Of a DNA stretch of 64,000 bases, positions 4,062 to 60,174 are shown in pieces. How positions within the stretch are numbered: position 1 is the stretch's first letter; each line of letters opens with the position of its first letter. The translations under genes and the position numbers were made by a program. The DNA lies in the IMG/VR virus record IMGVR_UViG_3300033183_000491, positions 124,001 through 188,000 of that record. One strand, given 5' to 3'. The notes beneath the pieces are model-generated. The model was given only the letters and a program-made list of their open reading frames with translations, did not search any database and was not told the DNA's origin.

Positions 4062-4068
4062 TAATTAT
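4062..4068 (-). promoter_or_regulatory. Candidate late promoter ATAATTA, overlapping the TATTTATAAATA palindrome at 4052-4063
   Basis: 23 nt upstream of ATG 4038, the head of the terL-portal unit. Confidence 0.55.
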
Positions 4069-4101
4069 TACTTTGTAATAGTATTTATTAGATCTTCATA
4101 T

Positions 4102-4335
4102 TTAATCTTTATTTTCTTCAAAATCATAGTAATATAGATTATAACAAGATTCACATACATTGTGTTCTTTTATGTATTCAACGTCTTCAACAGAAGATAT
4201 TAAAATTTTACAATTTTTACAGTCTAAAGATAAAGGTTTATCGCCTGCAGGCCTGATGAATTTGATGTCATTTAGAATCAATTCTTCAGTTTCATTATCT
4301 ATTTTTTCCCATTTTTTGTCATGAATAGTAGACAT
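4102..4335 (-). CDS. Small CxxC-x18-CxxC (putative Zn-binding) protein; start re-called to the ATG at 4335
   Basis: CKNC...CESC; AAGGA lies about 10 nt before ATG 4335; the start overlaps the last codons of the SbcDC fusion; the longer 4398 start is buried in that gene. Confidence 0.6.
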   Translation of the reverse strand: MSTIHDKKWEKIDNETEELILNDIKFIRPAGDKPLSLDCKNCKILISSVEDVEYIKEHNVCESCYNLYYYDFEENKD

Positions 4336-7300
4336 AAGAGTCATTTCCTTTTCTTGTAATTTCAATATTTTTATCAACGATATCTTTAATAGAATCAACG
4401 TGTGATATAATCAAAATAGTTTTAAAATATTTCTTAAGACTTGTTAACAGTCTAGAACAAGATTCTATGTTTGAATCATCTAAAGCACCAAAGCCTTCAT
4501 CTATTATAAAGATATTTGATTTTGGTAACGAAGAAAGATTAATCAAAGCTACTCTAATAGCAATTGAAGTAATCATTTTCTCCATTCCACTTGCACATTC
4601 AATTACTCTCTTAGAATCTCCATAATCAATATAAACATTAAGATTATTACCTTCTTCTTCAAGATTTATATTAAATGAAGACACACCTGAAAGTATTTTA
4701 TTTATTTCTTTATTTAATTGAGGAAGACTATTATTAATAATCATTGTTGGAATTCCTTTTTTAGAAACAGAGTATGTAAATAAATCAAAAGTTTTCCATT
4801 CATCGATAATTTTATAATATTCTATTTTTTCTTTTTCAAGAGATTCAATATTAACTTCTGACGAGTAAATATCTTTACCTAAATTGGTTACAAGATTTTC
4901 TTTGTCGTATATGTCAGAAGATATCTCTTTTAATCTCTGTTTTAATTCTTTTTCTTTTATGATTAAATCATTGTTAGAAATGTCTTCTAATTCAGAACAA
5001 ATAATCTCAAGTCTTTTTAGTTTTTCATTGTTAATATTTATTTTTTCTTCATTAATAGATATTTTTTCTTTATTTCTTTCGAGATCAATATTAATCTTAT
5101 ATTCTTTATTTAAAATGTCGTTGAATTTTTTAATTTTTTCTTCTAGATCTTGTTTTTCAATAGACTTAATTGCTGAAGATATTTCTAGTACATTGTTTTC
5201 GATATCTTTAATTTCAGATACTATAGTTTCAATATTATCTTTTGAAGAATATGCATCTTTAATAAATTTGCAACTTGAGTAATTTTCATCACAAGGAACT
5301 TCTTCTAGGATTTTTAGACTATTTTTGTTTCTTTTAAGTTCTTCATCTAAGAATATTTTATTTCTTTTAATATTGTTTAATTTTAACTTTAAACTGTCTA
5401 ATTTTTCTTTGTCTTCTTTTAAGTTTTCAATTGTATAATTTCTTTTAAAATTATCTATCTTTTCTAAGGACTCTGAATCTAATTCTATTTTTCGATTTAA
5501 AGATACTAATTCTTCATTAAAAGATTTTAGTTTTTCCTTTAAATAGTTTTTTTCTTTATTAGCTTGATCTAATGTATATCCTGATGGGTGTTCATTGCTC
5601 TTTTCAATATTGTTTAGTTCTAATTTAATTTCAATCTCTTTTTCTCTTAAAGAAAAAATAATATCTTTTGTCTTTTGTTTTAAATTTTCAAGATCATCAA
5701 TTTTTTCTTTCTGATTTGAAACAAGATCGTCCCAGTTCTTTTTCTCTAAAGATTTTTGTTTATTCTTTAATACAATATAATCTTCTCTAGAGTTTTTATA
5801 TAAAGAATCATATAAGTCTAATTTAAGAAATTTAGATAAAACTGTTTTTCTAGCTGAAGATTTCTCTTGAATGAATGTATTCATTTGTCCTTGTGAAGCG
5901 AAAGTCGTATAAAGAAAATCTTCGGGAGTTCCTATTAGATTCTTTATTATTTTTTCTGTTTCTCTTCTTTGTTCTTCAGTTTGATTTTCTTCTGAAAAGT
6001 TGTCTAGACTAGAAAGATTTAAATTCGTTATAGATGAAATGTTTCCTTTTTTATCTGTTCTTTTCGTAGTACTTCTTTCAATAGTATATCTTGACTGACC
6101 TATTGATATATCAGCAATTGCTTTACAAGATCCTTTTCTAGTATTTACGATATCTTGGTTTTTTAATGATCCTCTATCAGAACTATTAAATAAACAATAC
6201 ATTAAACTACCAGGAATTGAAGATTTACCAGCTCTATTGTTTCCAAATAAACCTACTACACCTTCAAGATTATCAAAATTAATAAAGTTATCTTTTCCAT
6301 ATGAAAATGTATTATCAAACTTTAAACTATGGACAGACCAATGATTTGAGTTAGAGTCGCTTTTTTCAATTGTTACTTCATCTAAGTACTTAGAATATAA
6401 ATTGTTTACTTCATTAATTCTTTCTTCTTCGACTACATCACCAAAAAAGTCATTCAATAAATCTTTTCTTTTAGAAGAATTAGTTATATTAAAGTTTCTA
6501 TTTACAGTGGTATTTAAACTAGAAGTATCTATTTCATTTTTTCCAGTATTTTGATATACGATTTCTTTAGCAAGCTTGTCTTCTTTTAAATAATGATGTA
6601 AAAGTTTAATTTCAACTTGAGTAATACTGCTATTAGATCTAATTCTGAATCTAGATCCTTTTTTAACTGCCATTATATAGGGAAGAGTTTTCTCAACTGA
6701 TCCTTTCCAGTCAATAGTAATAAATGGATGAGGATTATCTACTGAAATGAATTTACTTTTATAATCGTTTGAGTTTTTAATTTCCCATAAAAGAAATCCT
6801 TTTTTAATGTCTTCACCGTAATTTTGTTGTACTGTTGATCCAGGATAAGCTACTCTTTTTTCGTTATCTAAATACTGTAATTTATGTATATCTCCTAGGA
6901 AAGAAAAGTCGTATCCATCAAAAAAACTTAGATTAACTTCGCCTTCTAGTTCCCAGTCAATATCGGTCTTTGATCCCCATACTGCTCCATGAAAGCATGC
7001 TATATTAATATCACCTTTGATAGGTTTAACTTTATCCCAGTTTTCTTCATCAAAACAAGAAAAAACACACCAATTAAAACCATCTATCCCAGTTGGATAG
7101 ACTCCACTATTTTTATAAAGAAAAATATTATCATTTTTTAATGCGCTGATAATTGGAGAAATTGCGTCTTGTCTATCTTTATTTAAGATTAATCCATCAT
7201 GATTTCCAAGAATAACATGCGTTGGTGCAATACTTGCGAGACTATTAAACCACCATGTTAAATTATCAATAATTTCAGGAGATATTCCTTGTGTTTTAGA

Positions 7301-7447
7301 ATGAACAATGTCACCACCAATAAAAATAATATTTGGTTTTTCTTCTTTTAGTTTTTCAAACAATTTTTCAAATACAGATCTATATTCTTCATGTCTTTTA
7401 AGACCTCTCCAATGAATATCTGATATGTGTGCGCATTTAAAAGTCAT
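4319..7447 (-). CDS. Mre11/SbcD-Rad50/SbcC fusion nuclease-ATPase
   Basis: N-terminal metallophosphoesterase motifs HISDIH, GGDIVH, GNHD, FHG, GDIHK; then Walker A GNNRAGKSS, Q-loop FASQGQ, long coiled coil with central C-x6-C, signature ASGME, Walker B FIIDEGFGALD, H-loop ISH; one uninterrupted ORF. Confidence 0.95.
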   Translation of the reverse strand: MTFKCAHISDIHWRGLKRHEEYRSVFEKLFEKLKEEKPNIIFIGGDIVHSKTQGISPEIIDNLTWWFNSLASIAPTHVILGNHDGLILNKDRQDAISPIISALKNDNIFLYKNSGVYPTGIDGFNWCVFSCFDEENWDKVKPIKGDINIACFHGAVWGSKTDIDWELEGEVNLSFFDGYDFSFLGDIHKLQYLDNEKRVAYPGSTVQQNYGEDIKKGFLLWEIKNSNDYKSKFISVDNPHPFITIDWKGSVEKTLPYIMAVKKGSRFRIRSNSSITQVEIKLLHHYLKEDKLAKEIVYQNTGKNEIDTSSLNTTVNRNFNITNSSKRKDLLNDFFGDVVEEERINEVNNLYSKYLDEVTIEKSDSNSNHWSVHSLKFDNTFSYGKDNFINFDNLEGVVGLFGNNRAGKSSIPGSLMYCLFNSSDRGSLKNQDIVNTRKGSCKAIADISIGQSRYTIERSTTKRTDKKGNISSITNLNLSSLDNFSEENQTEEQRRETEKIIKNLIGTPEDFLYTTFASQGQMNTFIQEKSSARKTVLSKFLKLDLYDSLYKNSREDYIVLKNKQKSLEKKNWDDLVSNQKEKIDDLENLKQKTKDIIFSLREKEIEIKLELNNIEKSNEHPSGYTLDQANKEKNYLKEKLKSFNEELVSLNRKIELDSESLEKIDNFKRNYTIENLKEDKEKLDSLKLKLNNIKRNKIFLDEELKRNKNSLKILEEVPCDENYSSCKFIKDAYSSKDNIETIVSEIKDIENNVLEISSAIKSIEKQDLEEKIKKFNDILNKEYKINIDLERNKEKISINEEKININNEKLKRLEIICSELEDISNNDLIIKEKELKQRLKEISSDIYDKENLVTNLGKDIYSSEVNIESLEKEKIEYYKIIDEWKTFDLFTYSVSKKGIPTMIINNSLPQLNKEINKILSGVSSFNINLEEEGNNLNVYIDYGDSKRVIECASGMEKMITSIAIRVALINLSSLPKSNIFIIDEGFGALDDSNIESCSRLLTSLKKYFKTILIISHVDSIKDIVDKNIEITRKGNDSYVYYS

Positions 7448-14168: not shown

Positions 14169-14197
14169 ACTAAAGTCTCCTAATTATATTTTATTTA

Positions 14198-14204
14198 TAA
14201 ATAT
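14198..14204 (-). promoter_or_regulatory. Candidate late promoter ATATTTA (palindrome at 14192-14203; second copy ATAATTA at 14181-14187)
   Basis: 29 nt upstream of ATG 14168. Confidence 0.55.
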
Positions 14205-36757: not shown

Positions 36758-36764
36758 TAATTAT
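36758..36764 (-). promoter_or_regulatory. Candidate late promoter ATAATTA within the palindrome ATATAATTATAT (36755-36766)
   Basis: 29 nt upstream of the gp25-like ATG at 36728. Confidence 0.55.
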
Positions 36765-39013: not shown

Positions 39014-39718
39014 TTAAAATATGTCAAACATCTTATCTGGTCCAGCTACTTTTTTATAGTGCTTTCTTATTGAAGATAAAGAAGAACTTAGTTCTGAACT
39101 ATTTAGGCCAGAAATTTCTCTCAAATATACGAAAATAGCTCTTTTATTTAAATAGTCTAAATTATCTACATTAGTAAATATCTGTTGTATAGCTTTAATA
39201 CACCTTATATCTTTTTCATCTTTTAGTTGATCTTCGATATAAAGAAGCATTTCATCTATTACACTCGGTATATTTTCTTTTCTTTCTTTTTCATCGGGCG
39301 ATAATTCTATACTAGTCTCTGAAAGATATTTCTTGTCTGAAAATGATAAGTTTTCTGGAGCATTTAATGATACACTTCTATTCGCGTTTTTTGCTAATCG
39401 TCTAGAATTAATCGTTAACCAGTTTTTTGCGACAACATTAAAATAAGAAAAAGCTTTCGTACCATTTTCAGGATTCCACTTGTTAATTGTTTCAAATAAA
39501 AAGGTAGAACAATCGTTTTTTAAATGGCCAATATCTTCTATAGAAGCTTTAAATTTATAAACAGACACTAAACTGTGAACTAATTCATTAAAAGCTGGCA
39601 TTATATGATGTTCATATATTTTATCTTTTTCTTTTTTAGAATCAGTCTTTTGATAGAGAACTATTTTTTCTTGTGTCTCCATCGTGAAATATTGTTTTCT
39701 TTTTCTTTTTTTGGCCAA
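39014..39718 (-). CDS. gp55: Phage RNA polymerase sigma factor, T4 gp55-like (TTG start)
   Basis: YFT...QEKIV, PAFNELVHSLV..YKF, region-2-like KWNPENGTKAFSYFNVVAKNWL; C-terminal HTH-like segment; SD AAGGA before TTG. Confidence 0.75.
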   Translation of the reverse strand: MAKKRKRKQYFTMETQEKIVLYQKTDSKKEKDKIYEHHIMPAFNELVHSLVSVYKFKASIEDIGHLKNDCSTFLFETINKWNPENGTKAFSYFNVVAKNWLTINSRRLAKNANRSVSLNAPENLSFSDKKYLSETSIELSPDEKERKENIPSVIDEMLLYIEDQLKDEKDIRCIKAIQQIFTNVDNLDYLNKRAIFVYLREISGLNSSELSSSLSSIRKHYKKVAGPDKMFDIF

Positions 39719-40968: not shown

Positions 40969-40974
40969 ATTATA
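40969..40974 (-). promoter_or_regulatory. Sigma70-type -10 hexamer TATAAT for the Cas4-like gene
   Basis: Exact TATAAT 22 nt before ATG 40946; TTTATA lies 18 nt upstream. Confidence 0.4.
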
Positions 40975-41012
40975 TAAAATTTTATTTACATTTATAAATC
41001 ATTTTAAACTGA

Positions 41013-41019
41013 ATATTTA
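41013..41019 (+). promoter_or_regulatory. Candidate late promoter ATATTTA
   Basis: 38 nt upstream of the plus-strand fibre gene ATG at 41058. Confidence 0.5.
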
Positions 41020-43011: not shown

Positions 43012-43070
43012 ATCTCCAGTAATATATTTATTAACATCAATCCTAATTAAAATAATATATTACTGGAGAT
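43012..43070 (+). promoter_or_regulatory. Perfect 17-bp inverted repeat sequestering the SD of the 126-aa gene, with an internal ATATTTA (43024-43030)
   Basis: ATCTCCAGTAATATATT (43012-43028) is the exact reverse complement of AATATATTACTGGAGAT (43054-43070); GGAG at 43065-43068; ATG at 43075. Confidence 0.85.
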
Positions 43071-43074: not shown

Positions 43075-43455
43075 ATGTCAAGTAAAGAAAAAATTCTAAG
43101 AATAGGTTTAGGCGAAGCAATTTCAAGATTAATGAAACTTGAAAGTATGAGATCAAATAGACTTCACCCAATGCCAAGTCAAGCAATTGCTGAAAGAGAA
43201 ATGCTTTATTTAGCTCTAAATGAGATTAAAATTGATCTTGGTTTCGATTGTGATGATGATGGTCTTCCTGATTCTGTTGAAATTTTTGAACAAAGTGCTC
43301 GATCTTCTTGTTGCCGACTAGTTCAGTCTGAAGATAGTGGTCCGAAAAAGTCTAGAATTAATAGAGCAAAAGTTCAAAGAGGACAAGTTACAAAACAAGA
43401 AAAACCTAAAGAAGAAATCAAAAAGGCAAGAAAATCTCGCTCTAGAAAGAAATAA
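43075..43455 (+). CDS. Hypothetical protein with a DxDxDG-like loop and a K/R-rich C-terminal tail
   Basis: DCDDDGLPDS; tail KKARKSRSRKK; SD GGAG lies inside a 17-bp hairpin. Confidence 0.75.
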   Translation: MSSKEKILRIGLGEAISRLMKLESMRSNRLHPMPSQAIAEREMLYLALNEIKIDLGFDCDDDGLPDSVEIFEQSARSSCCRLVQSEDSGPKKSRINRAKVQRGQVTKQEKPKEEIKKARKSRSRKK

Positions 43456-43482
43456 ATATAATACTTGAAAGGAGTCACAGAT

Positions 43483-43746
43483 TTGTCTCTGTTTGAACTT
43501 TTATTTTGCTATGGATTAACATTTGGAATGATGAATAAAACATCATGGATTCAAAACAGAATTCAAATTTTAGATGATATGTTAGCTTGCTCATATTGCA
43601 CTGGGTTTCATGCAGGCTGGATTAGTCTTTTGCTTTTACATCCTACATTATTTAAAGACCCACAAACTATTTTGTTTTGGGCCTTTGTTTCTTCGTCATT
43701 TAGTTATATTATAGACACTTTTGTTGCCTATTTAGAAGATAATTAA
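43483..43746 (+). CDS. Small membrane protein, DUF1360-like (CxxC in a hydrophobic segment); start re-called to the TTG at 43483
   Basis: MLACSYCTGFHAGW resembles the DUF1360 LLxCxxCxxxW motif; 2-3 hydrophobic stretches; AAGGAG 8 nt before TTG 43483. Confidence 0.6.
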   Translation: MSLFELLFCYGLTFGMMNKTSWIQNRIQILDDMLACSYCTGFHAGWISLLLLHPTLFKDPQTILFWAFVSSSFSYIIDTFVAYLEDN

Positions 43747-45944: not shown

Positions 45945-45968
45945 TATCTTTCCTTTTCGATTTATTTA

Positions 45969-45975
45969 TAAATAT
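45969..45975 (-). promoter_or_regulatory. Candidate late promoter ATATTTA (palindrome TATTTATAAATA at 45963-45974)
   Basis: 24 nt upstream of the fibre gene ATG at 45944. Confidence 0.55.
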
Positions 45976-45992
45976 AAAGTAATTTTTCTTAA

Positions 45993-46268
45993 TTAAGTTT
46001 TTGGCGTAATATCGCCATTTTCGTCTAATTCAAAGTTATCATCTGTATTTTGAAGTATATCATCAGGTAAATTTACTGTAAGCGTTCCTGAATTGTTTGT
46101 TTCATCGATATCAACAAGAAACAAGCCAGTACCGTTTGTTAAGTCGTCTTGAATAGTATAATCAGATCCGTTAGCTATAAAAAGACTACCGTCTCCAACG
46201 ACTTTTGTGCTTAAAGCAAATCCGTTATTGTTTTCATCGACGTTTATTTTTTTAATTCCGTAAGACAT
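45993..46268 (-). CDS. Small hypothetical protein, possible fibre adaptor
   Basis: SD AAGGA; C-terminal FELDENGDITP is similar to FEFDSEGNVMP of 57715..58239. Confidence 0.6.
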   Translation of the reverse strand: MSYGIKKINVDENNNGFALSTKVVGDGSLFIANGSDYTIQDDLTNGTGLFLVDIDETNNSGTLTVNLPDDILQNTDDNFELDENGDITPKT

Positions 46269-46287
46269 TTTTAATCCTTATAAAATA

Positions 46288-49200
46288 TTAAATTATTTCC
46301 CAAGAGTCTACACCATCGCTAATCAAATCTAAACTTTGTCCTGGTGTTTGTGAATCTGTCATAACAAAAGAAGCTAATCCTTCAATATTATCGCCACTAT
46401 AAGGTATGACGGTTAGAAGGTTTGTTCCAGCTTTGAATTTGATCCTTAGTTGCTGGCCAGCTACTGTACTACTTACTTGGGGTAATGTAATGTTAATAGC
46501 TGAATTTGTTGTATTTACGCTATAGTGGTAATTTATTTGTGCATTAAATGATGTTGTCTTTGCTGAATATGTATAATGCATATTCGTTAATTGTGAACCA
46601 TCGACAGCAGGAAGTTTAGCATTAGCATCTAATTGTACAATATTATTAGCAGCAGTTCCTACGTCTAAGGCAGCAGCAGTTCCTAATGTTGGTAAGTCTG
46701 TCCAGCTTAAGACTCCGTTTCCATCTGTTCTAAGAACTTGATTTAAGTTTCCGCTAGATGTAGGAAGTGTCAGAGTATAATTTGCTGCAGCAGAGTGTGC
46801 TGGTCCTTGAATAGCTACCCAGTGTGTATTTTGTTCACACTTAAATCTAATTAGACCACTACCTCTTGTTGAGTTACCTTGAAGTGTAACATACCCTGCA
46901 CCGTTTGGATCAAGGTTGATGTGATATCCTAAACTTGTTGTTCTAATATCATATCCCCCAAGATCTAGATGTCCTCCTAGTACAGGCGAAGAATCTTCTG
47001 ATAGTGATTCAATGCCTCCTGTAGAATCAGACCATACAACATGTCCATTTGCATTATCCCAAGTTAAAACTTGTCCATCAGTAGGTGTATCATGACCAAT
47101 CTGAGTAACTTGACCATCTTGATTTGCTTTTAAGAACGTGTTGTGTGTAAAGTTACCCCAGTTTGACCCTAGATATGCACCAAAAACTCCTTTTGTTGAA
47201 TTAAATTCAATATCAAAGTCTGTATTAAGATCTGTATCAGCACCTTTAACTTTTTCAATATGGAAGAATGGATAAGGACCAGATAAGTCAATTCTTCTAG
47301 ATGAATCTGTAAATATAAACTTTCTACTTGCAGATTGAAGTACTAAATTAGAGTCTGAATTGTTTCCATAAGAATCAGCGATCAGTGCTTGTTGTGTACC
47401 TAAAACAAGAGACTTAGCTTGCGCAGTAACTGCTGATTCACCTGTAATCAAGATTTCAGATCCAGGATAGCCTGTTCCTCCAGCTCCTTCTGATGTTAAA
47501 GTCGTAAGAGTTCTTAAATTCATTCCGTCTTTAAATCTAATTTGTCGAGTATAATCTCCATTACTTAAAGATGAACTTATGACAAGAGAATCTGCAACAC
47601 CATTTAGATTAAAATCAATGTCTGCACTTGCAGAAGCGTTTGTTATTTCTATATTACCTGTACTACCAAGAGTCAATGTTCCGTTAGATGTTTCAAAAGC
47701 AATATTTCCACTGCCTTGAGTAATATCATCAGCAGAAGTTGATGTAGCTAATCCACTAACAAAATTAGCTTTGGTCATTTTCTTAAGATTGTTATTATCT
47801 TCAGAATCTGCTAATAAAATAATGTCATTGTCGTTAATTGCAAGTTTTTCAGTTTGACCTGTTAATGCTAAAGATTCTAAACTAAGTGTACCTGTACTTG
47901 TAATAGAAGCATCGCCAGAAACTTTTCCAAAGTTATAAGCAGCAATACTAGATGCTTCTACTTGATAGTTTATTCCTGAAGCTTCGTTATCTACTATAAA
48001 TAGATCTGAGTCTGTAATAGAAGCTAAATTATTTCCTCCATCAATATCAATAGAACTTAAAGCGACTTTGTTAGCAACTGTGAGAGTATTAAGCTTAGAG
48101 TTAGCAATACTCCCTGCAAGCATTGCACTTGTAATTCCGCCGCTTTTAACTTTAATGTTGTCATTAACATCTATTTCGATAGAAGCGTTATCCACATTAG
48201 CATCAATAACATTGCCATTCTTTGTTAAGCCAGCACCAGCGTCAACTTGGCCAGCTGAAGAGAATTGATAAACTGAAACGTCATCTGTTCCAACTACAAA
48301 TGTTGATGGATCTGAGACAACTTGAACCCATCCTGTACCTTCATTTGTCGTACCACTAGCAACAAATACGTATGCACCAGGAATTTCGTTAGATTCGTCA
48401 CAATATCCACATCGTGTCAAAATCCAGTCAGTAGCAGCGTCACCTATTTGTGATACATAATATCGACCATTTTGAAATGCTGATGTTTGGTCTTTTAATA
48501 AGACGCCGTCATATTGTGCCCAAGTAGTTACACCATCAATGTCTAATGTAGCACTTGCTCCTAGATTAAGAGTTGCACCTACACCATCATCTGCAATTCC
48601 ATTATCATATGTTCCTACTAAGTTTTGTGTTGTTGCAGCAAGAACTGAAGGTTTTGCAATGATTCCTTGTGCTACTTCGTCAACGTAAGCTTTATTAGCA
48701 GCATCACCATTTTCAGTTGGATTTGCAAGATTTGTAATCTTATTAGAGTTAAGATTTAAATCAACACTTTGTCCTGTTAAATCAACCGATGCTATTTCTG
48801 TATTGGAAGAGATCACCAGATTACCTGAGTTAACACTTATTTCAACGTTTGATGTATTGTTTGAATCTAACGTCCCCTTATCAACACGATCAATCTGGAG
48901 ATATTTTGGAGCTGTGACTGCATATGGATTGACTCTTGTATTAATCTTAAGACTGTTCTTTGATGCCATTAAGATTTCGCCGTCTGTTTGTGTACCATCA
49001 CCTGCTACTAAATGTAATCCGTGTGCAGATTGAGTCACAACATCCATTCCAATGTTACCACCAGTTATAAATCTTGTATTACGAGTTCCTGCGTGTGATG
49101 ACTGATTATACGCGTCATTTGTAAAAATACCTGCATAACTCTGCACATTACCTTCAGGGTCAGCCTCACCTACATCGTTTGTATGCGCTGCACCTTTAAC

Positions 49201-49746
49201 TCTTAATGCAGTTGCATTATCTTTTTGACCAATAATAACACCACTTGCTGTTAAGTCTTGACCTATTTGGACGTGTGACGAAGAGTTACCAATTAAAATA
49301 TCACTACTACTACCTATTTCAGATGAAATCCTTAGTTCTCCTGAAGTGTTGTTTATTAAGGAGTTGGTTCCATCGTGAGTTATAACTAAATCACTATCAG
49401 AACCCCATTTTAATTGAAAAGTATCTGGAATAATTGACGAAGAATTTTGGTCAAATGTTAATACTTTTGAATTCTCTGCTTGTCCTAATACAGATAAATC
49501 ATTATAATTCAACTCTAAAGAAGATGCAGTTATTCCTAATGACAAGATCGAATTATCAGGATTCTTGTTTATCCAAAATCCTTGTGTAGAGTCGTATATT
49601 AAAAAATGATTATCTTGAATATTATTTATATTGACATTGTTTAGATTATTAATATTACCGAGTGATAACAATTCTTCTACTTCGATTACTTCTGATGACA
49701 GTAGACTTGGATTGTCAATGTCACTATTAATAAAAATCGTATTCAT
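46288..49746 (-). CDS. Mosaic fibre protein (1152 aa)
   Basis: DAANKAYVD, VLLKDQ..QNGRY module, AGAGLTKNGN, SPVLGGHLD, GQVLTWD, C-terminal domain ending DGVDSWEII as in the 733-aa fibre. Confidence 0.8.
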   Translation of the reverse strand: MNTIFINSDIDNPSLLSSEVIEVEELLSLGNINNLNNVNINNIQDNHFLIYDSTQGFWINKNPDNSILSLGITASSLELNYNDLSVLGQAENSKVLTFDQNSSSIIPDTFQLKWGSDSDLVITHDGTNSLINNTSGELRISSEIGSSSDILIGNSSSHVQIGQDLTASGVIIGQKDNATALRVKGAAHTNDVGEADPEGNVQSYAGIFTNDAYNQSSHAGTRNTRFITGGNIGMDVVTQSAHGLHLVAGDGTQTDGEILMASKNSLKINTRVNPYAVTAPKYLQIDRVDKGTLDSNNTSNVEISVNSGNLVISSNTEIASVDLTGQSVDLNLNSNKITNLANPTENGDAANKAYVDEVAQGIIAKPSVLAATTQNLVGTYDNGIADDGVGATLNLGASATLDIDGVTTWAQYDGVLLKDQTSAFQNGRYYVSQIGDAATDWILTRCGYCDESNEIPGAYVFVASGTTNEGTGWVQVVSDPSTFVVGTDDVSVYQFSSAGQVDAGAGLTKNGNVIDANVDNASIEIDVNDNIKVKSGGITSAMLAGSIANSKLNTLTVANKVALSSIDIDGGNNLASITDSDLFIVDNEASGINYQVEASSIAAYNFGKVSGDASITSTGTLSLESLALTGQTEKLAINDNDIILLADSEDNNNLKKMTKANFVSGLATSTSADDITQGSGNIAFETSNGTLTLGSTGNIEITNASASADIDFNLNGVADSLVISSSLSNGDYTRQIRFKDGMNLRTLTTLTSEGAGGTGYPGSEILITGESAVTAQAKSLVLGTQQALIADSYGNNSDSNLVLQSASRKFIFTDSSRRIDLSGPYPFFHIEKVKGADTDLNTDFDIEFNSTKGVFGAYLGSNWGNFTHNTFLKANQDGQVTQIGHDTPTDGQVLTWDNANGHVVWSDSTGGIESLSEDSSPVLGGHLDLGGYDIRTTSLGYHINLDPNGAGYVTLQGNSTRGSGLIRFKCEQNTHWVAIQGPAHSAAANYTLTLPTSSGNLNQVLRTDGNGVLSWTDLPTLGTAAALDVGTAANNIVQLDANAKLPAVDGSQLTNMHYTYSAKTTSFNAQINYHYSVNTTNSAINITLPQVSSTVAGQQLRIKFKAGTNLLTVIPYSGDNIEGLASFVMTDSQTPGQSLDLISDGVDSWEII

Positions 49747-49790
49747 TTAATTTACCTTTATATTTTAATATTTTTATCTTGTTATGCTAT

Positions 49791-52700
49791 TTATCTTGAC
49801 GAACCAATAAATTGCCAAACGTAAGCATCAACTTCATCGATTATGTCACCCGGTGCAGTAGTTGTCCAGTTATCATTACCATGAACTTTAGTTATGTTTC
49901 CAAAACTATTTCTTGTCAATTCGAAAGTCAGTAATAAAGAACTAGAAGCTCGTAGGGAAAGAGACGTGTTTTTATAAAAATTAAGTCTATCATATGATGC
50001 ATAGGCACCGTGGCTCAACTTTCCAATAAACGTACATTGAGGAAATGAATTTTCTTTTGTTATAGCTCCCGGATTACCGTATTTATTGTCATCTGGATGC
50101 GGATAGACTCCAAAAGGAACCCAAATAGAGCCGTTAAAATTTGGCCCTCTGTCAACTTTTATAGTTATACGTGATCCAAATCCATAAGACGTTCTAACGC
50201 TTTCAGCAGATGGTAAATATATTTTTCTAGTTATATTATCTACATTATAAAAATTACCTAAAATAGCTAATCTATAAAAATCAAAACCGCTTTTAATTGA
50301 CATATAATATTCCTCGATAGTCCTTGAAGAAGCTTCAAAAGAAACATTTGCGATTGAATTAGTATCTTCTAAATCTAGTTGGACTGTGAGATTATCGTCA
50401 TTTATATTATAAGAGTTTAAATCACCTCCAGACAAGCTAGAGACGCTAAGAGATCCTACTGAAGCTGATATGTGTTGCTTTATAGCTTCTGCTGTTGCTA
50501 AATTTGAGTGTTTATCTGGTATATCATCTGATAAGTTATCTAAGACATTGACTTCACTAACATTTTGTGGGTTTGTTAAAGTTCCTACGTATCCTAGAAC
50601 TTTATTAGGATTAACTTTTTCAAGTTTTGATTTTGTGACTGCATTCTCATTTATCTTGGATGTTATAATTGCATTGTCACTAATATTTACAGATTGAATT
50701 GTTCCTTTTATAAGGGATGTACCTGATGAGTCGAACTTTAATACTTTATTAGAATCTTCAGAAGAACCTGTTAACGCTGATGGGAGTGTTACATCTTCGA
50801 CTTCATCAATATAATTTTCAATTAACCAACAATATTTGTTATTATATTCTTCTATAAAAGTAATTACTACTTTTTTAATTCCTTCTCCAGAAAATTTAAT
50901 TGTTTTTTGATTCGTAAAACCAAATTCCAAGTAATTACTATTATTAGTTGCATCTGATCTTTGCCATATATCATTTTGAGAAGAATTAATAATTAATTTT
51001 TGTAAGGCAATATCTGTAAAGTAAAAAGTCTTTTTGTCGCCGTTTATAAATCCATTTTCATAAGCTTCCAGTGCAGATGGTATATTCACAGACCTTGTAG
51101 TAGTCGCTCCAGTATCTCCTAAAGTTACTGAGTTTTTTTGTCGCCAAAGTGAAATATTGCTAAACTCTATAGGAGCTTGTGTTCCAGTTAGTTCATAATA
51201 AGAGTTATCATGAAAATCTTTTTTATCTAAAATACTAGCAAACCACCTTGTCCCATCGTATAAAAATTCTTTCGGGGAATGAAAATCTGTTCCATTATAA
51301 TAGATAACTAAATCATTTCCTAAATCTACTTTTACATTTAATTTTAAACTTGAAAATCTTCCTCTATTATTATGACTCTCTTCATAATAAGAATTCGGTG
51401 AATCGGGATAAGACATTGATATTTTTACAATGTCACCTTCTGATATGTCATTGAAACTTGTTAAGTTAAAAGTAAATAAAGATCCATCACTAACATTATC
51501 TTTAATATGATAGTGTTTGTTAGCTTTATATATATCACCTGGGTTAACAGTCGGAGTGATTAAACCAGCATTTGTAACAGGAATATATTCTAAATCATTA
51601 GGGATGTTTAAGCCTGACTTAAATTCAGAAATTGTAACTTTTTTATGTGTAGTAGATTCACTATCTTTTAAAACAATTAAGTCGTTATCTGTTACACTAT
51701 CATTTATTGAAAGCGGATTAAAATTCTCAATATCAAAACTATTTGCTGATTTTATATCAGAAAATGCAACTTTTTTAAGTAATGTAGATGAATCATCATA
51801 TACCAAGAAAGTATCGTCATCAGATAAAGGGCCATCACTGTTTGGATCGTTTGGATCTGAGTTGTAAAGAGTTTGTTCACTTATTGATTTTGAAGTTAAC
51901 GAAGAAGATAATTTTTGTACGCCATTGTCATCAACTACGCTAAATCCAACTTGACCTATCGAATCAGTAATATCTGCTCTTATATAATTTTTTAATACAG
52001 ATGCAGTGGATTTTGTTGTTAAACCATTTGGTGAATTAGCGCTAACATCTCTTACAATAAATAAATCATCATCAGCAATTGAATTTAAAACTGTATCGAT
52101 ATCATCCGGGTTAATTGCATTTTCGTTCACTGAAGAAGCTATAATATCTCCTGATATTTTACTAACAGGAATATCGGGAAGTCTAGCTACGTCAATTGTA
52201 CCAGTAAGAAGAGTAGAATCTACATTTTTTATTTTTAGATAATTATTATCAGGATCAACTTCGATTGATGTACCATCTGTTTTAACATCAAATACATTAC
52301 CTGTTTTTGATAAAGCAGCCCCAGCTTCGGTTTGGCCTGCCGCAGAGAATTTTGCAAATAAGATATCGTCATTTCCAACTGTATCAGCTGTTTCAGGCGA
52401 AGTACATATAAACCCAGATTGAGCATAAGTGTCACCTTCTTCGACAAATACAAACTTGGCTGAGACTTCATCGTTTAATTCAAAATCACTAGACCTTACA
52501 GCAGCACCTGATGCTTGAACTATATAAATACCATTATCGCGAGGGTCATTTTGATCTCTAACTAAAATTCTATCACCTGTTGAAACATTAACACCATCAA
52601 TCAAATCATTATTTTCAAGTTGGTCTGCAAGATTTATATTTGTTGTAGTTGCAAGCCTTACAGGTTGTAATACCTCTCTAAGACCTTGTACAACAAGATC

Positions 52701-54161
52701 AACATATTGTTTGTTTGCAGCGTCAGCATCATTTTGCGGTTGCTCTACAAGCGTTAAAGAGTTTAAAGATGCATCACCATTTGATTGAATATAATTTGTT
52801 AAATCAGGTAAATCAGCTGCTGTGATAAAGTCTGTAATTTCATCGTCTGTAACATAGTTGTCTAAACTAGATGAAGTTAAGAATCCCTGGTCTGAAACCC
52901 AGCCTTGAGTTGCAAAATATGCTGTTCTAGTGTCAATCTCTGATTGTGTTGGATCGTTAAACTTATATGTAAAAGTGAGTGGAATATTGTTGTTTGTAAA
53001 GAAAGTATCGTCAACATTTTCTATTCTTAAACTTTTTCCTCCTTGTGTTTCAAGACTTAGTTTTGTGTCTCCATTTGTGTTAGATGTAACTACTAAAACA
53101 TTACCACTGTCAGTACTTTGCAATTTTAATTTTGCATTGTCTGCTGCAGAGTCAGATTTTGCAATCATTCTTAATTCATCTGCTGATGTTTTAATAGAGT
53201 GAGTACCAACTGAAAGATCTCCTCCTAGAACTGGTGCAGGATCATCTTCGACTGCTTCTAATCCACCACTTCCTAGTTTAACCCATTTCATATTTGAAGT
53301 AGCAGTTCTAGAACTTCCATCTGTATGTGGAACTGTAAAGAATATCTTTTGAGTATTACTATCACCTTTTAATACAGCAACTCTTACTCCAGAAAAGTCA
53401 CTCGTAGCAATTAAGTCATTTGCTCTAACTGCAGGACCTTCTGCTGCAGAAACGATGTAAATACCATTTTCAGAAGGTGTGGCCTGATCTTTGACTAGGA
53501 CTCTGTCACCTGTTGTTAGAATCTGTCCATCAATCTCAATCCCGTTTACAAGTGCCGTTGTTAAATCAATCGGTTCTGTTGTTGCAAACTTAACATCTTC
53601 TAATGACGTAGTTACATTTTCATAGACCAAGCTCTCATTGACTAAAGTACCAATTTGTAAATTTTTAGATGCATTATCAATTCTTAAGTTTGAACTACCA
53701 AGATTTAAACCATCGTTAAGGAGATAAAGATCACGAATTGGTAAACTAGAAAGACCAAGATCAAAATCGCTTACTCTAGGAACAAAGTGACCTTGATCAT
53801 TTATGTACCACTTTTCATCACCTGATATTGAAAAAGATATTTTGTTCTCTAATGGGTCTGATGTCTTAATCGCTTCAACACTTGTCTGAGCACCTTCTTC
53901 ACCTTCGAAAATTTTATCGACCTGAGATGATCCTGCTGAAGAAGAACTTATTTTATAATGAATTCCTGATCCATCTTCAAAATTTTCTATGGTAATATTA
54001 TCTCCAGAAACTAATAAAGGTGCACCAGATGTGTTATTCAGGGTATCAGTTTTCATTTCTTGGATTAATCCAAGAGTTGCATTAATTCCTGCCCATCTTC
54101 TTGTTGGAAGGCCTAATTTTCCTTCACTATCTTGTCTAGGTACTAAATTCTTAGTTGCCAT
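49791..54161 (-). CDS. Mosaic fibre protein (1456 aa)
   Basis: N-terminus NLVPR..GKLG...W as in the 733-aa fibre; two DR(V/I)LV(K/R)DQ..NGIY modules; three DxD.(F/L)(I/L)V.D...KK modules; SD AGGAG. Confidence 0.8.
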   Translation of the reverse strand: MATKNLVPRQDSEGKLGLPTRRWAGINATLGLIQEMKTDTLNNTSGAPLLVSGDNITIENFEDGSGIHYKISSSSAGSSQVDKIFEGEEGAQTSVEAIKTSDPLENKISFSISGDEKWYINDQGHFVPRVSDFDLGLSSLPIRDLYLLNDGLNLGSSNLRIDNASKNLQIGTLVNESLVYENVTTSLEDVKFATTEPIDLTTALVNGIEIDGQILTTGDRVLVKDQATPSENGIYIVSAAEGPAVRANDLIATSDFSGVRVAVLKGDSNTQKIFFTVPHTDGSSRTATSNMKWVKLGSGGLEAVEDDPAPVLGGDLSVGTHSIKTSADELRMIAKSDSAADNAKLKLQSTDSGNVLVVTSNTNGDTKLSLETQGGKSLRIENVDDTFFTNNNIPLTFTYKFNDPTQSEIDTRTAYFATQGWVSDQGFLTSSSLDNYVTDDEITDFITAADLPDLTNYIQSNGDASLNSLTLVEQPQNDADAANKQYVDLVVQGLREVLQPVRLATTTNINLADQLENNDLIDGVNVSTGDRILVRDQNDPRDNGIYIVQASGAAVRSSDFELNDEVSAKFVFVEEGDTYAQSGFICTSPETADTVGNDDILFAKFSAAGQTEAGAALSKTGNVFDVKTDGTSIEVDPDNNYLKIKNVDSTLLTGTIDVARLPDIPVSKISGDIIASSVNENAINPDDIDTVLNSIADDDLFIVRDVSANSPNGLTTKSTASVLKNYIRADITDSIGQVGFSVVDDNGVQKLSSSLTSKSISEQTLYNSDPNDPNSDGPLSDDDTFLVYDDSSTLLKKVAFSDIKSANSFDIENFNPLSINDSVTDNDLIVLKDSESTTHKKVTISEFKSGLNIPNDLEYIPVTNAGLITPTVNPGDIYKANKHYHIKDNVSDGSLFTFNLTSFNDISEGDIVKISMSYPDSPNSYYEESHNNRGRFSSLKLNVKVDLGNDLVIYYNGTDFHSPKEFLYDGTRWFASILDKKDFHDNSYYELTGTQAPIEFSNISLWRQKNSVTLGDTGATTTRSVNIPSALEAYENGFINGDKKTFYFTDIALQKLIINSSQNDIWQRSDATNNSNYLEFGFTNQKTIKFSGEGIKKVVITFIEEYNNKYCWLIENYIDEVEDVTLPSALTGSSEDSNKVLKFDSSGTSLIKGTIQSVNISDNAIITSKINENAVTKSKLEKVNPNKVLGYVGTLTNPQNVSEVNVLDNLSDDIPDKHSNLATAEAIKQHISASVGSLSVSSLSGGDLNSYNINDDNLTVQLDLEDTNSIANVSFEASSRTIEEYYMSIKSGFDFYRLAILGNFYNVDNITRKIYLPSAESVRTSYGFGSRITIKVDRGPNFNGSIWVPFGVYPHPDDNKYGNPGAITKENSFPQCTFIGKLSHGAYASYDRLNFYKNTSLSLRASSSLLLTFELTRNSFGNITKVHGNDNWTTTAPGDIIDEVDAYVWQFIGSSR

Positions 54162-54194: not shown

Positions 54195-54201
54195 TAATTA
54201 T
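54195..54201 (-). promoter_or_regulatory. Candidate late promoter ATAATTA flanked by a 7-bp inverted repeat (54188-54208)
   Basis: 33 nt upstream of the 1456-aa fibre gene ATG; arms TTAATAC/GTATTAA. Confidence 0.5.
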
Positions 54202-58801: not shown

Positions 58802-60130
58802 TTAAAGTTTTGCTGCAACTATATTTGCAAGATCTGATCTATATCCCTTAGTGAAATTAATATGACCTGTTAAAGATTCTTCTTTTAATTTTTCAACTGT
58901 AAGAGTTAATCCATTCGATAATTTATTAATATAAGGTAAATCAACTTGTTCTATATCACCTAACAAAATTATTTTTGAATTTTTGCCTGTTCTAGTAATT
59001 ACAGTTTTTAATTCATGGACAGTTGCATTTTGAGCTTCGTCAACAATCATTACAGAGTCATTAAAACTTCTTCCTCTGATATGTGATAAAGGTGCTACGT
59101 CAATCTGACCTTTTTCCATCATCATTTCGAAATAAGAAAGATCTCCAAATTGATTTCTAAAGTTATCTACAATTGGTGATAACCAAGGAGACATCTTTTC
59201 ATTTAAGTCTCCGGGCAAGAAGCCAATATCTTTCCCTACTGTCTGAATAGGTCTTGTAAATATGATTCTTTTCTTTGAACCTTTTTCTATAAACTTTAAT
59301 GCAGTCATTAAAGCTAAGTATGTCTTACCACTACCAGGAACGCCTGTTAGAGAAACTAAAGGTATATTTTCATCTAATAAAAGACTTAAAGCAAATATTT
59401 GTTCTTTATTTTTAGGTTCAATACCAGAATTTTTATATAACTCTTTTTTTCCGTCCAAAACAATCAAACGATCATCTTTTCTTATTAGAAGACATGATTG
59501 ATTACTTCCGTTGTTAGATTTAAGAATTAAAAATTCATTTTCAGAAATGTCTATATTATAGTTTTCTTCAACAAGGTCTTCTTTTATCTTCAAATGATTA
59601 CCAGAATAGGCTCTGTTTATAACATCTGGGTCAACTAATAGTTCAACATACCCTTGGAATAAATTGTCTTTCTGCACAAATTCGTAATCTGCATAATAAT
59701 CATCTGCTTCTATTCCTACAGAATCACATTTTACTCTTAGATTAATGTCTTTAGTAATTAAAACAACTTTATTACTTAAATTTTTAAAATAGTTTGCATT
59801 AGAAATTATTTTATTATCATTTTGGTTTTGATCTAATCCTTGTAAACCTGACCAATCACATTCAGCATTTACTGTTATTGATATATCTTTATCTTCAACA
59901 TATATTCCTGAATGTAGGCTTCCTAATTTTCTTAAATCGTCTAGATATCTATTAAAAAATCTAGCATGTTCTCCTAAAATACCCTCTCTTGTTTTAAATT
60001 TATCTAGTTCTTCTAAAACAACTAAAGGTATTACTATATCATTTCCTTTCATATTAAACAAAGAAAATTTGTCATAAAGTAAAACGCTAGTGTCAACAAT
60101 AAAAGTTTTTCTAATATGTTTTTTACTCAT
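58802..60130 (-). CDS. phoH: PIN-PhoH protein (PhoH2/YlaK type)
   Basis: PIN motifs VDTSVLL, LEELD, DNKII, ITKDINLR; PhoH motifs GVPGSGKT, RGRSF, IVDEAQN, LLGDIEQVD. Confidence 0.93.
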   Translation of the reverse strand: MSKKHIRKTFIVDTSVLLYDKFSLFNMKGNDIVIPLVVLEELDKFKTREGILGEHARFFNRYLDDLRKLGSLHSGIYVEDKDISITVNAECDWSGLQGLDQNQNDNKIISNANYFKNLSNKVVLITKDINLRVKCDSVGIEADDYYADYEFVQKDNLFQGYVELLVDPDVINRAYSGNHLKIKEDLVEENYNIDISENEFLILKSNNGSNQSCLLIRKDDRLIVLDGKKELYKNSGIEPKNKEQIFALSLLLDENIPLVSLTGVPGSGKTYLALMTALKFIEKGSKKRIIFTRPIQTVGKDIGFLPGDLNEKMSPWLSPIVDNFRNQFGDLSYFEMMMEKGQIDVAPLSHIRGRSFNDSVMIVDEAQNATVHELKTVITRTGKNSKIILLGDIEQVDLPYINKLSNGLTLTVEKLKEESLTGHINFTKGYRSDLANIVAAKL

Positions 60131-60157
60131 TATCTAGTAAAATCTTTCTTTTAAATC

Positions 60158-60163
60158 TATAAT
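60158..60163 (+). promoter_or_regulatory. Sigma70-type -10 hexamer TATAAT for the stand-alone sigma-4 gene
   Basis: Exact TATAAT 39 nt before ATG 60203, in a divergent intergenic region. Confidence 0.35.
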
Positions 60164-60167
60164 AAAA

Positions 60168-60174
60168 TAAATAT
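60168..60174 (-). promoter_or_regulatory. Candidate late promoter ATATTTA upstream of the PIN-PhoH/lectin/fibre unit
   Basis: 37 nt upstream of ATG 60130. Confidence 0.45.

What the first reader, a model, noticed from the sequence alone, without database searches (positions are those of the whole stretch)
4062..60174. Two promoter classes: a non-T4 late motif ATA(A/T)TTA versus TATAAT, alongside a phage gp55-like sigma factor
Seen: ATAWTTA lies on the coding strand 23-44 nt upstream of eight start codons that open structural or late-type units (4038, 14168, 36728, 41058, 43075, 45944, 54161, 60130). The gaps before non-structural genes (40030, 40946, 60203, 62576) lack it and carry exact TATAAT instead. 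Known: T4 gp55 reads a single -10-type element, TATAAATA, and only three of the eight sites here contain that sequence. Inference: the sigma at 39014-39718 may recognise a different consensus. Caveat: intergenic DNA is extremely AT-rich and I did not count background occurrences.
Basis: partly seen in the sequence, partly recalled or inferred. Interest (0 to 1): 0.65.

Follow-up and report, generated by a model that had tools for sequence, protein, structure and literature searches.

The report
Non-T4 late promoter ATAnTTA in marine phages
A 7-base signal, ATAnTTA, sits 15-40 bases upstream of virion genes in this 240-kb marine phage and its whole clade; it is most likely their late promoter, read by a very divergent T4-gp55-like sigma factor, and this can be tested in two cultured relatives.

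Summary
All eight ATAWTTA sites are where stated. The genome is 29% GC, so about half of such hits here could be chance (63 sense against 32 antisense in promoter windows).

The evidence from relatives is decisive:
- In five relatives of 40-50% GC, an unbiased 7-mer ranking puts ATATTTA first (53 seen, 1.8 expected, 3 antisense). ATACTTA, ATAGTTA and ATAATTA also rank high.
- The same holds in the cultured Flavobacterium phage immuto.
- T4's TATAAATA is not enriched in this clade, although the same pipeline recovers it in T4.

Six of the eight sites are conserved at orthologous genes. The site at 45944 is undecided. The site at 60130 precedes PhoH, which is not structural, and is not conserved.

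There is no -35-like element. Every downstream gene that can be named is a virion gene.

The protein at 39014-39718 has no sequence match to any known family. Its N-terminal domain model best matches T4 gp55 (Z 10.7), and it carries an extra sigma-region-4-like domain.

The link between this sigma and the motif rests on co-occurrence, not on experiment.

The TATAAT class is a two-part promoter, GTGTAAAT-N15-TATAAT. Only 40946 fits it fully and 60203 nearly.

The genome also holds a canonical sigma that lacks region 4 and a stand-alone region-4 protein.

The parts
4062..4068 (-). ATAATTA, 23 nt upstream of the 125-aa gene that opens the unit with the large terminase and portal genes
   Evidence: Distant orthologs carry ATANTTA in 2 of 3 cases. 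Terminase and portal identified.
14198..14204 (-). ATATTTA, 29 nt upstream of the 251-aa gene. A second copy, ATAATTA, lies at 14181-14187.
   Evidence: 4 of 5 distant orthologs carry ATANTTA 16-25 nt upstream. The overlapping TATAAATA is not conserved.
36758..36764 (-). ATAATTA, 29 nt upstream of the gp25-like baseplate wedge gene (36240-36728)
   Evidence: 39 of 43 distinct orthologous upstream regions carry sense ATANTTA, and 15 of 15 in loci with GC >= 0.37. Matches Pfam GPW_gp25 at E 3.6e-6 (27.1 bits, just under the 27.2-bit cut-off), backed by PHROG baseplate-wedge families.
41013..41019 (+). ATATTTA, 38 nt upstream of the 645-aa gene of unknown function
   Evidence: 3 of 3 close orthologs keep ATAWTTA at the same place within otherwise changed flanks.
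43024..43030 (+). ATATTTA, 44 nt upstream of the 126-aa gene
   Evidence: 8 of 8 distinct orthologous upstream regions carry ATANTTA.
45969..45975 (-). ATATTTA, 24 nt upstream of the 733-aa gene with a head-decoration/fibre-like domain. Undecided.
   Evidence: The only ortholog with an aligned N-terminus (L010) lacks an exact copy. PHROG matches.
54195..54201 (-). ATAATTA, 33 nt upstream of the 1456-aa gene with a decoration/fibre-like domain
   Evidence: 5 of 5 orthologs (L170-L174) carry ATANTTA 30-37 nt upstream. PHROG matches.
60168..60174 (-). ATATTTA, 37 nt upstream of phoH. Probably a chance copy.
   Evidence: The gene is PhoH-like, phrog_2765 at 1.8e-100. 0 of 2 orthologs carry the motif.
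39014..39718 (-). Divergent sigma factor of 234 aa with a TTG start: a gp55-like sigma-2 domain (residues ~9-112), a linker, and a sigma-4-like domain (residues ~145-234)
   Evidence: No Pfam, PHROG or PDB sequence hit. 2367 homologs. AF2 model with pLDDT 80. All 50 top Foldseek PDB hits are sigma factors. VIA best hit is 7d7d_F = gp55, Z 10.7. The C-terminal domain matches sigma region 4 at Z 5.5-6.5.
40969..40997 (-). Two-part promoter TTATAAAT-N15-TATAAT in front of the PD-(D/E)XK exonuclease gene (40113-40946). This is the class that heads the sigma-containing gene row.
   Evidence: The same architecture is conserved in relatives. ATANTTA is present in only 1 of 49 orthologous upstream regions.
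60135..60163 (+). Near match to the two-part class (TAGTAAAA-N15-TATAAT) in front of the 87-aa gene
60203..60466 (+). Stand-alone sigma-70 region-4 protein of 87 aa
   Evidence: Pfam Sigma70_r4 at 8.2e-10, above the cut-off. phrog_351 match.

Best explanation
ATAnTTA (ATAWTTA in this AT-rich genome) is the late promoter of this phage and of its whole clade. It is a single -10-type element without a -35 partner, lying 15-40 nt upstream of the start codons of virion-gene units.

The element lines up with T4's late element at five of its specified bases: nATAnTTA against TATAAATA. The A at the sixth place of the T4 element is T here, and the fifth place is free.

It is most likely read by host core RNA polymerase carrying the phage protein encoded at 39014-39718. 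The N-terminal domain of that protein is folded like T4 gp55. It also has its own sigma-4-like domain, so it may combine in one chain what T4 splits between gp55 and gp33.

The sigma gene has no ATAnTTA of its own. It lies in a gene row headed by a two-part promoter (GTGTAAAT-like box, 15 nt, TATAAT), which would allow it to be made before the late genes.

Shown: the motif, its orientation, its position, its conservation, the kinds of genes behind it, the absence of a -35 element, the fold of the sigma, and the co-occurrence of sigma and motif.
Inferred: that the motif is a transcription start signal, that it acts late, and that this sigma reads it.
For: Unbiased discovery:
- Among 831 upstream windows of five relatives with 40-50% GC, ATATTTA ranks first of all 7-mers (53 seen, 1.8 expected, 3 antisense). 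ATACTTA (19 vs 1.15), ATAGTTA (16 vs 1.1) and ATAATTA (10 vs 1.0) are also strongly enriched.
- Per genome, 10-37 sense sites against 0.2-1.9 expected and 0-5 antisense.
- In the cultured Flavobacterium phage immuto, ATATTTA ranks first (34 vs 1.7, antisense 3). In Microcystis phage Mel-JY01 it is 22 vs 4.5.
- In the window's own genome, ATAATTA ranks first and ATATTTA third.

Control: the same pipeline run on T4 ranks ATAAATA and TATAAAT first and second, and does not enrich ATAWTTA.

Conservation at orthologous genes:
- gp25-like baseplate gene: 39/43 upstream regions, and 15/15 in GC-rich loci.
- Exonuclease gene 1/49 and the sigma gene 0/62.
- Tail tube, tail sheath and head-tail adaptor-like genes: 5/5 each.
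- Window sites 54161: 5/5; 43075: 8/8; 41058: 3/3.
- Across 61 genes, presence of the motif here goes with presence at the orthologs (Fisher p 0.0045).

Other points:
- No position from -50 to -1 carries information over 98 sites.
- The downstream genes in G001 that can be named are portal, sheath, adaptor, tail fibre and protease, plus one weak cytidyltransferase match. None belongs to DNA metabolism.
- In this genome the two classes divide the map: the region from 200 kb to the end plus 0-10 kb has 17 two-part promoters and 5 motif sites, against 8 and 40 in the rest (Fisher p 1.6e-6).
- The hosts differ (Flavobacterium, Microcystis, unknown marine hosts) while the motif stays the same, which argues for recognition by a phage protein.
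- Sigma fold.
- The G001 and G002 homologs give the same kind of sub-threshold Sigma70_r2 hit as T4 gp55.
- immuto and Mel-JY01 have this sigma and the motif but no canonical sigma.
Against: - No transcription start site data. The one metatranscriptome run holds only contigs over 41349-42599.
- No sequence similarity to gp55 (hhalign probability 0.2%).
- The role of a sigma-4-like domain at a promoter without a -35 element is unexplained.
- No gp45-type sliding clamp was detected, so T4-style clamp activation cannot be assumed.
- The genome also encodes a canonical sigma (regions 1.2-3) and a separate region-4 protein, which could be involved.
- The tail tube and the larger sheath gene of this genome carry TAATATATAATATAAAG instead of an exact ATAnTTA, so the true specificity is looser than the 7-mer.
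- 'Late' timing is inferred from the kinds of genes only.
- 13 of the 20 genes scanned in G001 have no annotation.
Confidence: 0.6

Rival explanations
1. The motif is a promoter, but it is read by something other than the 39014-39718 protein. Candidates are the phage's canonical sigma (249 aa, regions 1.2-3, at genome 25962-26711) with or without the stand-alone region-4 protein (window 60203-60466), a host sigma, or a phage-encoded RNA polymerase.
For: - A canonical Sigma70_r2/r3 protein and a separate Sigma70_r4 protein exist in this genome, and the canonical sigma also in G001 and G002.
- The assignment to the gp55-like protein rests on co-occurrence and fold only.
Against: - immuto and Mel-JY01 show the motif strongly but give no Sigma70_r2 match at all, while both have the gp55-like homolog.
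- The hosts belong to different phyla, yet the motif is constant.
- ATAnTTA does not fit the TAnnnT pattern of a sigma-70 -10 element (established knowledge).
- None of the large window proteins matches an RNA polymerase family. The rest of the genome was not scanned protein by protein.
Confidence: 0.15
2. The motif acts in the RNA, not as a promoter. It could be a leader element such as a processing site, a binding site for a translational regulator, or an AU-rich translation enhancer placed upstream of the ribosome-binding site.
For: - It lies 15-40 nt before start codons and is strand-specific, as an RNA element would be.
- No start-site data exist.
Against: - Six invariant positions around one free position, with no further structure or flanking conservation, look like a protein-DNA site of the -10 type.
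- It occurs at the heads of gene rows, in intergenic gaps, rather than before every gene (33-37 of 342 genes in G001).
- It aligns with the T4 late element at five of its specified bases.
- It co-occurs with a gp55-like sigma.
Confidence: 0.12
3. The motif is the binding site of a late activator or repressor that works with host sigma-70 at nearby TATAAT-like sequences.
For: - Three of the eight window gaps also hold TATAAT.
- TATAATA is itself enriched upstream of genes.
Against: In the GC-rich relatives the sites have no conserved TATAAT or any other conserved position within 50 nt upstream or 10 nt downstream.
Confidence: 0.08
4. The pattern is chance in AT-rich intergenic DNA.
For: Intergenic GC is 22%. 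Antisense copies in the same windows number 32 against 63 sense.
Against: There is a 12- to 50-fold sense enrichment in relatives with 40-50% GC, first rank among all 7-mers, conservation at orthologous genes, and a working positive control.
Confidence: 0.02

Closest known systems
Bacteriophage T4 late promoters (TATAAATA) read by gp55 with gp33 and the gp45 sliding clamp
   Same: - A single -10-type element of 7-8 bp with no -35 element, placed shortly upstream of virion genes.
- Five of the specified bases coincide (ATA..TA).
- The sigma's N-terminal domain is folded most like gp55 (Z 10.7).
- Like T4 gp55, homologs give only sub-threshold matches to Sigma70_r2.
   Different: - The consensus is ATAnTTA. 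TATAAATA is not enriched.
- No sequence similarity to gp55.
- The protein carries a sigma-4-like domain in the same chain, whereas T4 supplies the flap-binding part as a separate protein, gp33 (PMC2988020).
- No gp45-type clamp was found.
- gp55's C-terminal clamp-binding tail is absent. Only an internal LDYL stretch weakly resembles it.
Two-domain (sigma-2 plus sigma-4) sigma factors, such as ECF sigmas and phage sigmas of the phiEco32 gp36 type
   Same: Size (about 230 aa) and domain order: a sigma-2-like domain, a linker and a sigma-4-like helix-turn-helix domain.
   Different: - Those factors read two-part -35/-10 promoters. Here no -35 element accompanies the motif.
- The Pfam sigma models do not reach threshold.
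Late promoters of T4-like cyanophages and other T4 relatives, reported as close variants of TATAAATA (from my own knowledge; PMC1524935 was listed by the paper search but not opened)
   Same: Variation on a single late element within the wider T4-like world. The terminase, portal, sheath and baseplate genes here are distantly T4-like.
   Different: As I recall them, those variants keep the AAATA core. This clade has TTA in its place and a free fourth base, together with a sigma that the gp55 family models do not find.

Membership tests
T4-type late promoter | A single conserved -10-type element without a conserved -35 element | tested here: met
   98 sites from five relatives: information only at the 7-bp core, none from -50 to -1.
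T4-type late promoter | Consensus TATAAATA | tested here: not met
   TATAAAT and ATAAATA show no sense enrichment in this genome or in seven relatives, but rank first and second in T4 with the same pipeline.
T4-type late promoter | Placed before late (virion) genes | tested here: met
   The motif precedes tail tube, sheath, adaptor, baseplate hub and wedge, portal, tail fibre and the terminase unit. None of the genes that could be named belongs to DNA metabolism. Actual timing was not measured.
T4-type late promoter | Transcription starts a fixed few bases downstream of the element and needs gp55, gp33 and a DNA-loaded clamp | not testable with these tools
   The only RNA run is kept as contigs and covers 41349-42599. 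A gp45-type clamp was not detected.
gp55 family of late sigma factors | Sigma region-2-like fold that docks on the beta-prime coiled coil | tested here: met
   Model residues 9-109 against 7d7d_F (gp55): Z 10.7, rmsd 2.7, 97 residues aligned. This is the best of 48,161 chains. Docking itself was not tested.
gp55 family of late sigma factors | Detectable sequence relationship to gp55 | tested here: not met
   hhalign of the family profile against T4 gp55 gives probability 0.2%. No PHROG or Pfam hit.
gp55 family of late sigma factors | No sigma-4 domain, with the flap-binding function on a separate protein (gp33) | tested here: not met
   The C-terminal 99 residues fold like sigma region 4, matching 7vpd_F, 4xln_F, 3mzy, 6ono, 3hug and 2h27 at Z 5.5-6.5.
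gp55 family of late sigma factors | C-terminal sliding-clamp-binding motif (SLDFL type) | tested here: inconclusive
   Only an internal, conserved LDYL segment (residues about 186-190) aligns with it, E 0.34.
Sigma-70 family (Pfam Sigma70_r2 / r4) | Matches to the curated region 2 and region 4 models above threshold | tested here: not met
   No match for this protein. Its G001 and G002 homologs reach only E 0.02-0.05 on Sigma70_r2.
Sigma-70-type two-part promoter (the TATAAT class) | A -10 TATAAT plus an upstream box at -35 spacing | tested here: met
   27 sites match [GT]T[GA]TA[AT]AN-N13-17-TA[TAC]A[AT]T (consensus GTGTAAAT-N15-TATAAT), and 23 of them have a 15-nt spacer. In the window, 40969-40997 matches and 60135-60163 nearly does. 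The box is not TTGACA, and in G001 it is TCGTGCAA.

The most novel reading that the evidence does not exclude
This large clade of mostly marine phages (2367 homologs of the sigma in the word search, including cultured Flavobacterium and Microcystis phages) uses a so far unrecognised sigma family. It would be a natural one-chain counterpart of T4's split gp55 + gp33, reading its own single-element late promoter, ATAnTTA, without a -35 element and perhaps without a gp45-type clamp. Alongside it, the phage would carry a second, oppositely split sigma: regions 1.2-3 on one protein and region 4 on another.
Probability: 0.4. Interest if true: 0.75.

Novelty: new variant of a known kind. Interest (0 to 1): 0.62.

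Why it matters
- It gives a testable late-transcription code for an abundant but barely studied clade of large marine phages. ATAnTTA can be used to call late genes and operon heads in hundreds of metagenomic genomes where most proteins have no annotation.
- It identifies a protein family, annotated as hypothetical even in the cultured isolates, as a probable sigma factor.
- It offers a natural experiment on how gp55-type factors choose their -10 bases, and on whether a fused sigma-4 domain can stand in for gp33.

Tried and rejected
- Megablast of window 38000-46000 against the phage collection found nothing.
- My own EM motif search with a zero-order background gave only low-information AT-rich patterns in this genome, and noise in pooled loci where many 'gaps' were uncalled genes. 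One run hit the time limit. I replaced it with k-mer ranking against the rest of the genome, with the antisense strand as control.
- Single-sequence and profile searches of the sigma against Pfam, PHROGs and PDB sequences found nothing.
- hhalign against T4 gp55 found no similarity.
- T4 gp45 protein and Pfam DNA_PPF against the genome found no match. This is not proof of absence.
- RNA evidence: one metatranscriptome run with 6% of the words, kept as contigs. It covers only 41349-42599 at 93-100% identity and gives no start sites.
- The ESM Atlas look-up of the 645-aa protein returned only unnamed viral clusters.
- The literature search found no paper linking ATATTTA or ATAATTA to a phage late promoter, and nothing on Mel-JY01. 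Papers that mention immuto deal with DNA polymerases and base modification.
- Bacteroidetes -7 box (TAnnTTTG, from my own knowledge) considered and rejected. The final base here is an invariant A, the spacing differs by one, the base before ATA is not T-enriched, and the motif also occurs in a cyanophage.


Full report
**Setting.** The window is bases 124001-188000 of a 239,550-bp virus record with 141-bp direct terminal repeats and 29% GC. It carries distantly T4-like morphogenesis genes:
- portal (25-2019) and large terminase (2023-3657);
- an SbcC-like nuclease subunit (4319-7447);
- gp25-like and gp6-like baseplate wedge genes (36240-36728 and 34391-36235);
- three large genes sharing a decoration/fibre-like domain (43743-54161);
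- phoH (58802-60130).

The nearest cultured phages are Flavobacterium phage vB_FspM_immuto (terminase 39% identical) and Microcystis phage Mel-JY01.

**The observation.** Exactly three of them overlap TATAAATA. The four comparison gaps lack the motif and hold TATAAT. Three of the eight 'late' gaps also contain TATAAT, and the gene at 60130 is PhoH rather than a structural gene.

**Background in this genome.** I called 280 genes with a simple ORF and codon-usage procedure.
- In upstream gaps, ATAWTTA occurs 55 times against 31.6 in dinucleotide shuffles, z 4.5.
- In windows 10-45 nt upstream of all starts, it occurs 63 times in sense and 32 in antisense (p 0.001). The rest of the genome predicts 6.1.
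- ATAATTA is the top-ranked 7-mer there and ATATTTA the third.

So there is a signal, but in 22%-GC spacers about half of the individual hits may be chance.

**Relatives settle it.** The sigma-like protein has 2367 homologs in the word search, many from ocean surveys, and at least 554 viral contigs encode it. I fetched 80 loci and then five whole relatives with 40-50% GC.
- In 831 upstream windows of these five, ATATTTA ranks first of all 16,384 possible 7-mers (53 seen, 1.8 expected, 3 antisense; z 33). ATACTTA, ATAGTTA and ATAATTA are also strongly enriched.
- Each genome alone shows 10-37 sense sites against 0.2-1.9 expected.
- The motif is therefore ATAnTTA. The fourth base is mostly T, is A or T in AT-rich members, and can be any base in GC-rich ones.
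- The cultured phage immuto again has ATATTTA as its top 7-mer (34 vs 1.7, antisense 3). Mel-JY01 has 22 vs 4.5.
- As a positive control, the same script on T4 ranks ATAAATA and TATAAAT first and second and does not enrich ATAWTTA.
- Conversely, TATAAAT(A) shows no sense enrichment anywhere in this clade.

**Anatomy.** Over 98 sites, no position from -50 to -1 carries information, and the immediate flanks carry none either. The motif ends 14-43 nt before the start codon. It is a single-element signal, like a T4 late promoter. Written in register, nATAnTTA and TATAAATA share ATA..TA. The sixth base of the T4 element (A) is T here, and the fifth is free.

**Which genes.**

| Gene (start) | Orthologous upstream regions with sense ATAnTTA |
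|---|---|
| gp25-like baseplate wedge (window 36728) | 39 of 43; 15 of 15 in GC-rich loci |
| Tail tube | 5/5 |
| Tail sheath | 5/5 |
| Head-tail adaptor-like | 5/5 |
| Baseplate hub | 2/4 |
| Window 54161 | 5/5 |
| Window 43075 | 8/8 |
| Window 41058 | 3/3 |
| Window 14168 | 4/5 |
| Window 4038 (terminase unit) | 2/3 |
| Exonuclease (window 40946) | 1/49 |
| Sigma gene (window 39718) | 0/62 |
| phoH (window 60130) | 0/2 |

- The site at 45944 has no informative ortholog.
- Of 20 G001 genes behind the motif, those that can be named are portal, sheath, adaptor, tail fibre and protease, plus one weak cytidyltransferase match. None belongs to DNA metabolism, and 13 have no PHROG match.

**The other class.** The strongest word in this genome's spacers is GTGTAAAT (17 seen, 0.6 expected).
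- It is the upstream box of a two-part promoter, GTGTAAAT-N15-TATAAT, often followed by AAACCAtAAGGTCC.
- There are 27 sites, and 23 of them have exactly 15 nt between box and TATAAT.
- They cluster before the small genes at 200-239 kb and 0-10 kb. That region has 17 of them against 5 ATAnTTA sites, versus 8 and 40 in the rest of the genome (Fisher p 1.6e-6).
- In G001 the box reads TCGTGCAA and the -10 is extended, TGTGGTATAAT.
- In the window, only the exonuclease promoter (40969-40997) fits fully and 60135-60163 nearly. The TATAAT copies at 40030 and 62576 have no box.
TATAAT alone is a poor marker for the second class.

**The sigma.**
- The 234-aa product of 39014-39718 matches nothing by sequence.
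- With a 25-sequence alignment, AlphaFold gives pLDDT 80.
- All 50 best Foldseek PDB matches are sigma-70-family factors.
- In an exhaustive structural scan, the best match of residues 9-109 is chain F of 7d7d (Z 10.7, rmsd 2.7, 97 residues). That chain is T4 gp55 (PMC7892883).
- The C-terminal 99 residues, folded alone (pLDDT 87), match sigma region 4 domains at Z 5.5-6.5. These values are modest for a helical domain, but sigma region 4 chains make up most of the best-ranked matches.
- hhalign finds no sequence relationship to gp55. The only aligned stretch is gp55's clamp-binding tail SLDFL against an internal, conserved LDYL (E 0.34, a weak lead).
- The G001 and G002 homologs give sub-threshold Sigma70_r2 hits of the same kind as T4 gp55.
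- So 'gp55-like' is fair for the fold of the N-terminal domain. The protein is not a member of the gp55 family as defined by sequence or by architecture.
- Geiduschek and Kassavetis describe gp55 plus gp33 as a split sigma and report that artificial gp55-gp33 fusions work (PMC2988020). This family may be a natural unsplit counterpart. That is inference.

**Linking sigma and motif.** The motif is constant while the hosts differ (Flavobacterium, Microcystis, unknown marine bacteria), which points to a phage-encoded reader.

This genome has two more sigma-related genes:
- a canonical sigma with regions 1.2, 2 and 3 but no clear region 4 (249 aa, genome 25962-26711, behind a two-part promoter);
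- a stand-alone region-4 protein (87 aa, window 60203-60466).

The canonical sigma is present in G001 and G002 but absent from immuto and Mel-JY01. Both of those still have the motif and the gp55-like homolog.

The sigma gene itself has no ATAnTTA (0 of 62). It lies downstream of the exonuclease gene's two-part promoter in one gene row, which fits expression before the late genes.

**What could not be done.** No transcription start data exist. The single metatranscriptome run holds contigs only over 41349-42599. No gp45-type clamp was found. The tail tube and the larger sheath gene of this genome carry TAATATATAATATAAAG in place of an exact ATAnTTA, although their orthologs have the motif. The real specificity is therefore somewhat looser than the 7-mer.

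**Verdict.** The motif is real and conserved across the clade, and it is distinct from T4's. It is best read as a T4-style single-element late promoter with a changed consensus. Its likely reader is a very divergent sigma with a gp55-like fold that also has a sigma-4-like domain. It is a new variant of a known kind, and it can be tested directly in two cultured phages.

Noticed in passing
genome 25962-26711 (-), outside the window (L182:10962-11711), and window 60203-60466 (+): The phage encodes a canonical sigma with regions 1.2, 2 and 3 but no clear region 4 (249 aa), and 158 kb away a stand-alone Sigma70_r4 protein (87 aa). This may be a sigma split the opposite way to T4's gp55/gp33. Both genes have orthologs in G001 and G002. 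Which promoters they serve is unknown; the two-part class, whose box differs between relatives, is a candidate.
   Followed up: partly
genome 205-235 kb (+) and 6-65 kb (-); in the window only 40969-40997: There are 27 promoters of the form GTGTAAAT-N15-TATAAT, many followed at once by the conserved AAACCAtAAGGTCC, which would be the first transcribed bases. In G001 the box is TCGTGCAA and the -10 is an extended TGTGGTATAAT. The box changes between related phages, which is unusual for a host -35 element.
   Followed up: partly
related loci L006, L014, L019, L023, L024, L045, L056 and others, upstream of the exonuclease ortholog (equivalent to window 40947-41057): An inverted repeat (GACCTCAC ... 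GTGAGGTC) brackets the -10 box and ends in the ribosome-binding site. It shows compensating changes (L006: GACCTCTC ... GAGAGGTC). A transcript reading through from upstream would hide the ribosome-binding site, while one started at the promoter would not. The window's own copy lacks the 5' arm.
   Followed up: no
genome 97250-101623 and 101666-104773 (L136:1250-8773): Two adjacent tail-sheath paralogs (1457 and 1035 aa), both matching phrog_23. Each has its own upstream signal.
   Followed up: no
window 43743-45944, 46288-49746, 49791-54161: Three consecutive large genes share one head-decoration/fibre-like domain (phrog_2647, 30390, 27782). They lie in a stretch of raised GC (30-37% against 23-30% over most of the rest of the window).
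   Followed up: no
sigma protein residues about 179-190 (window about 39149-39184): [quoted passage not shown]
   Followed up: partly
genome about 45751-45810, upstream of the gene starting at 45811: Three tandem copies of AAAAACATATTT, which gives three ATATTTA motifs in a row before a 132-aa gene.
   Followed up: no
genome about 222.9 kb and 205362-208278: A stretch that looks like a tRNA 3' end (GGTCCCCAGTTCAATCCTGGG) lies upstream of the gene at 222991. There is also a 2.9-kb stretch without called genes. tRNA genes in the early region are likely but were not scanned.
   Followed up: no
window 38627-39004 and 39731-40030: The 125-aa and 99-aa genes flanking the sigma gene are conserved next to it in 80 and 74 of 80 related loci, and have no family match. 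They are candidates for partners of the sigma.
   Followed up: no
genome 114963-116342 (L136:18963-20000): An HNH/homing-endonuclease-like gene (phrog_3339, 1.9e-78) sits within the structural region.
   Followed up: no
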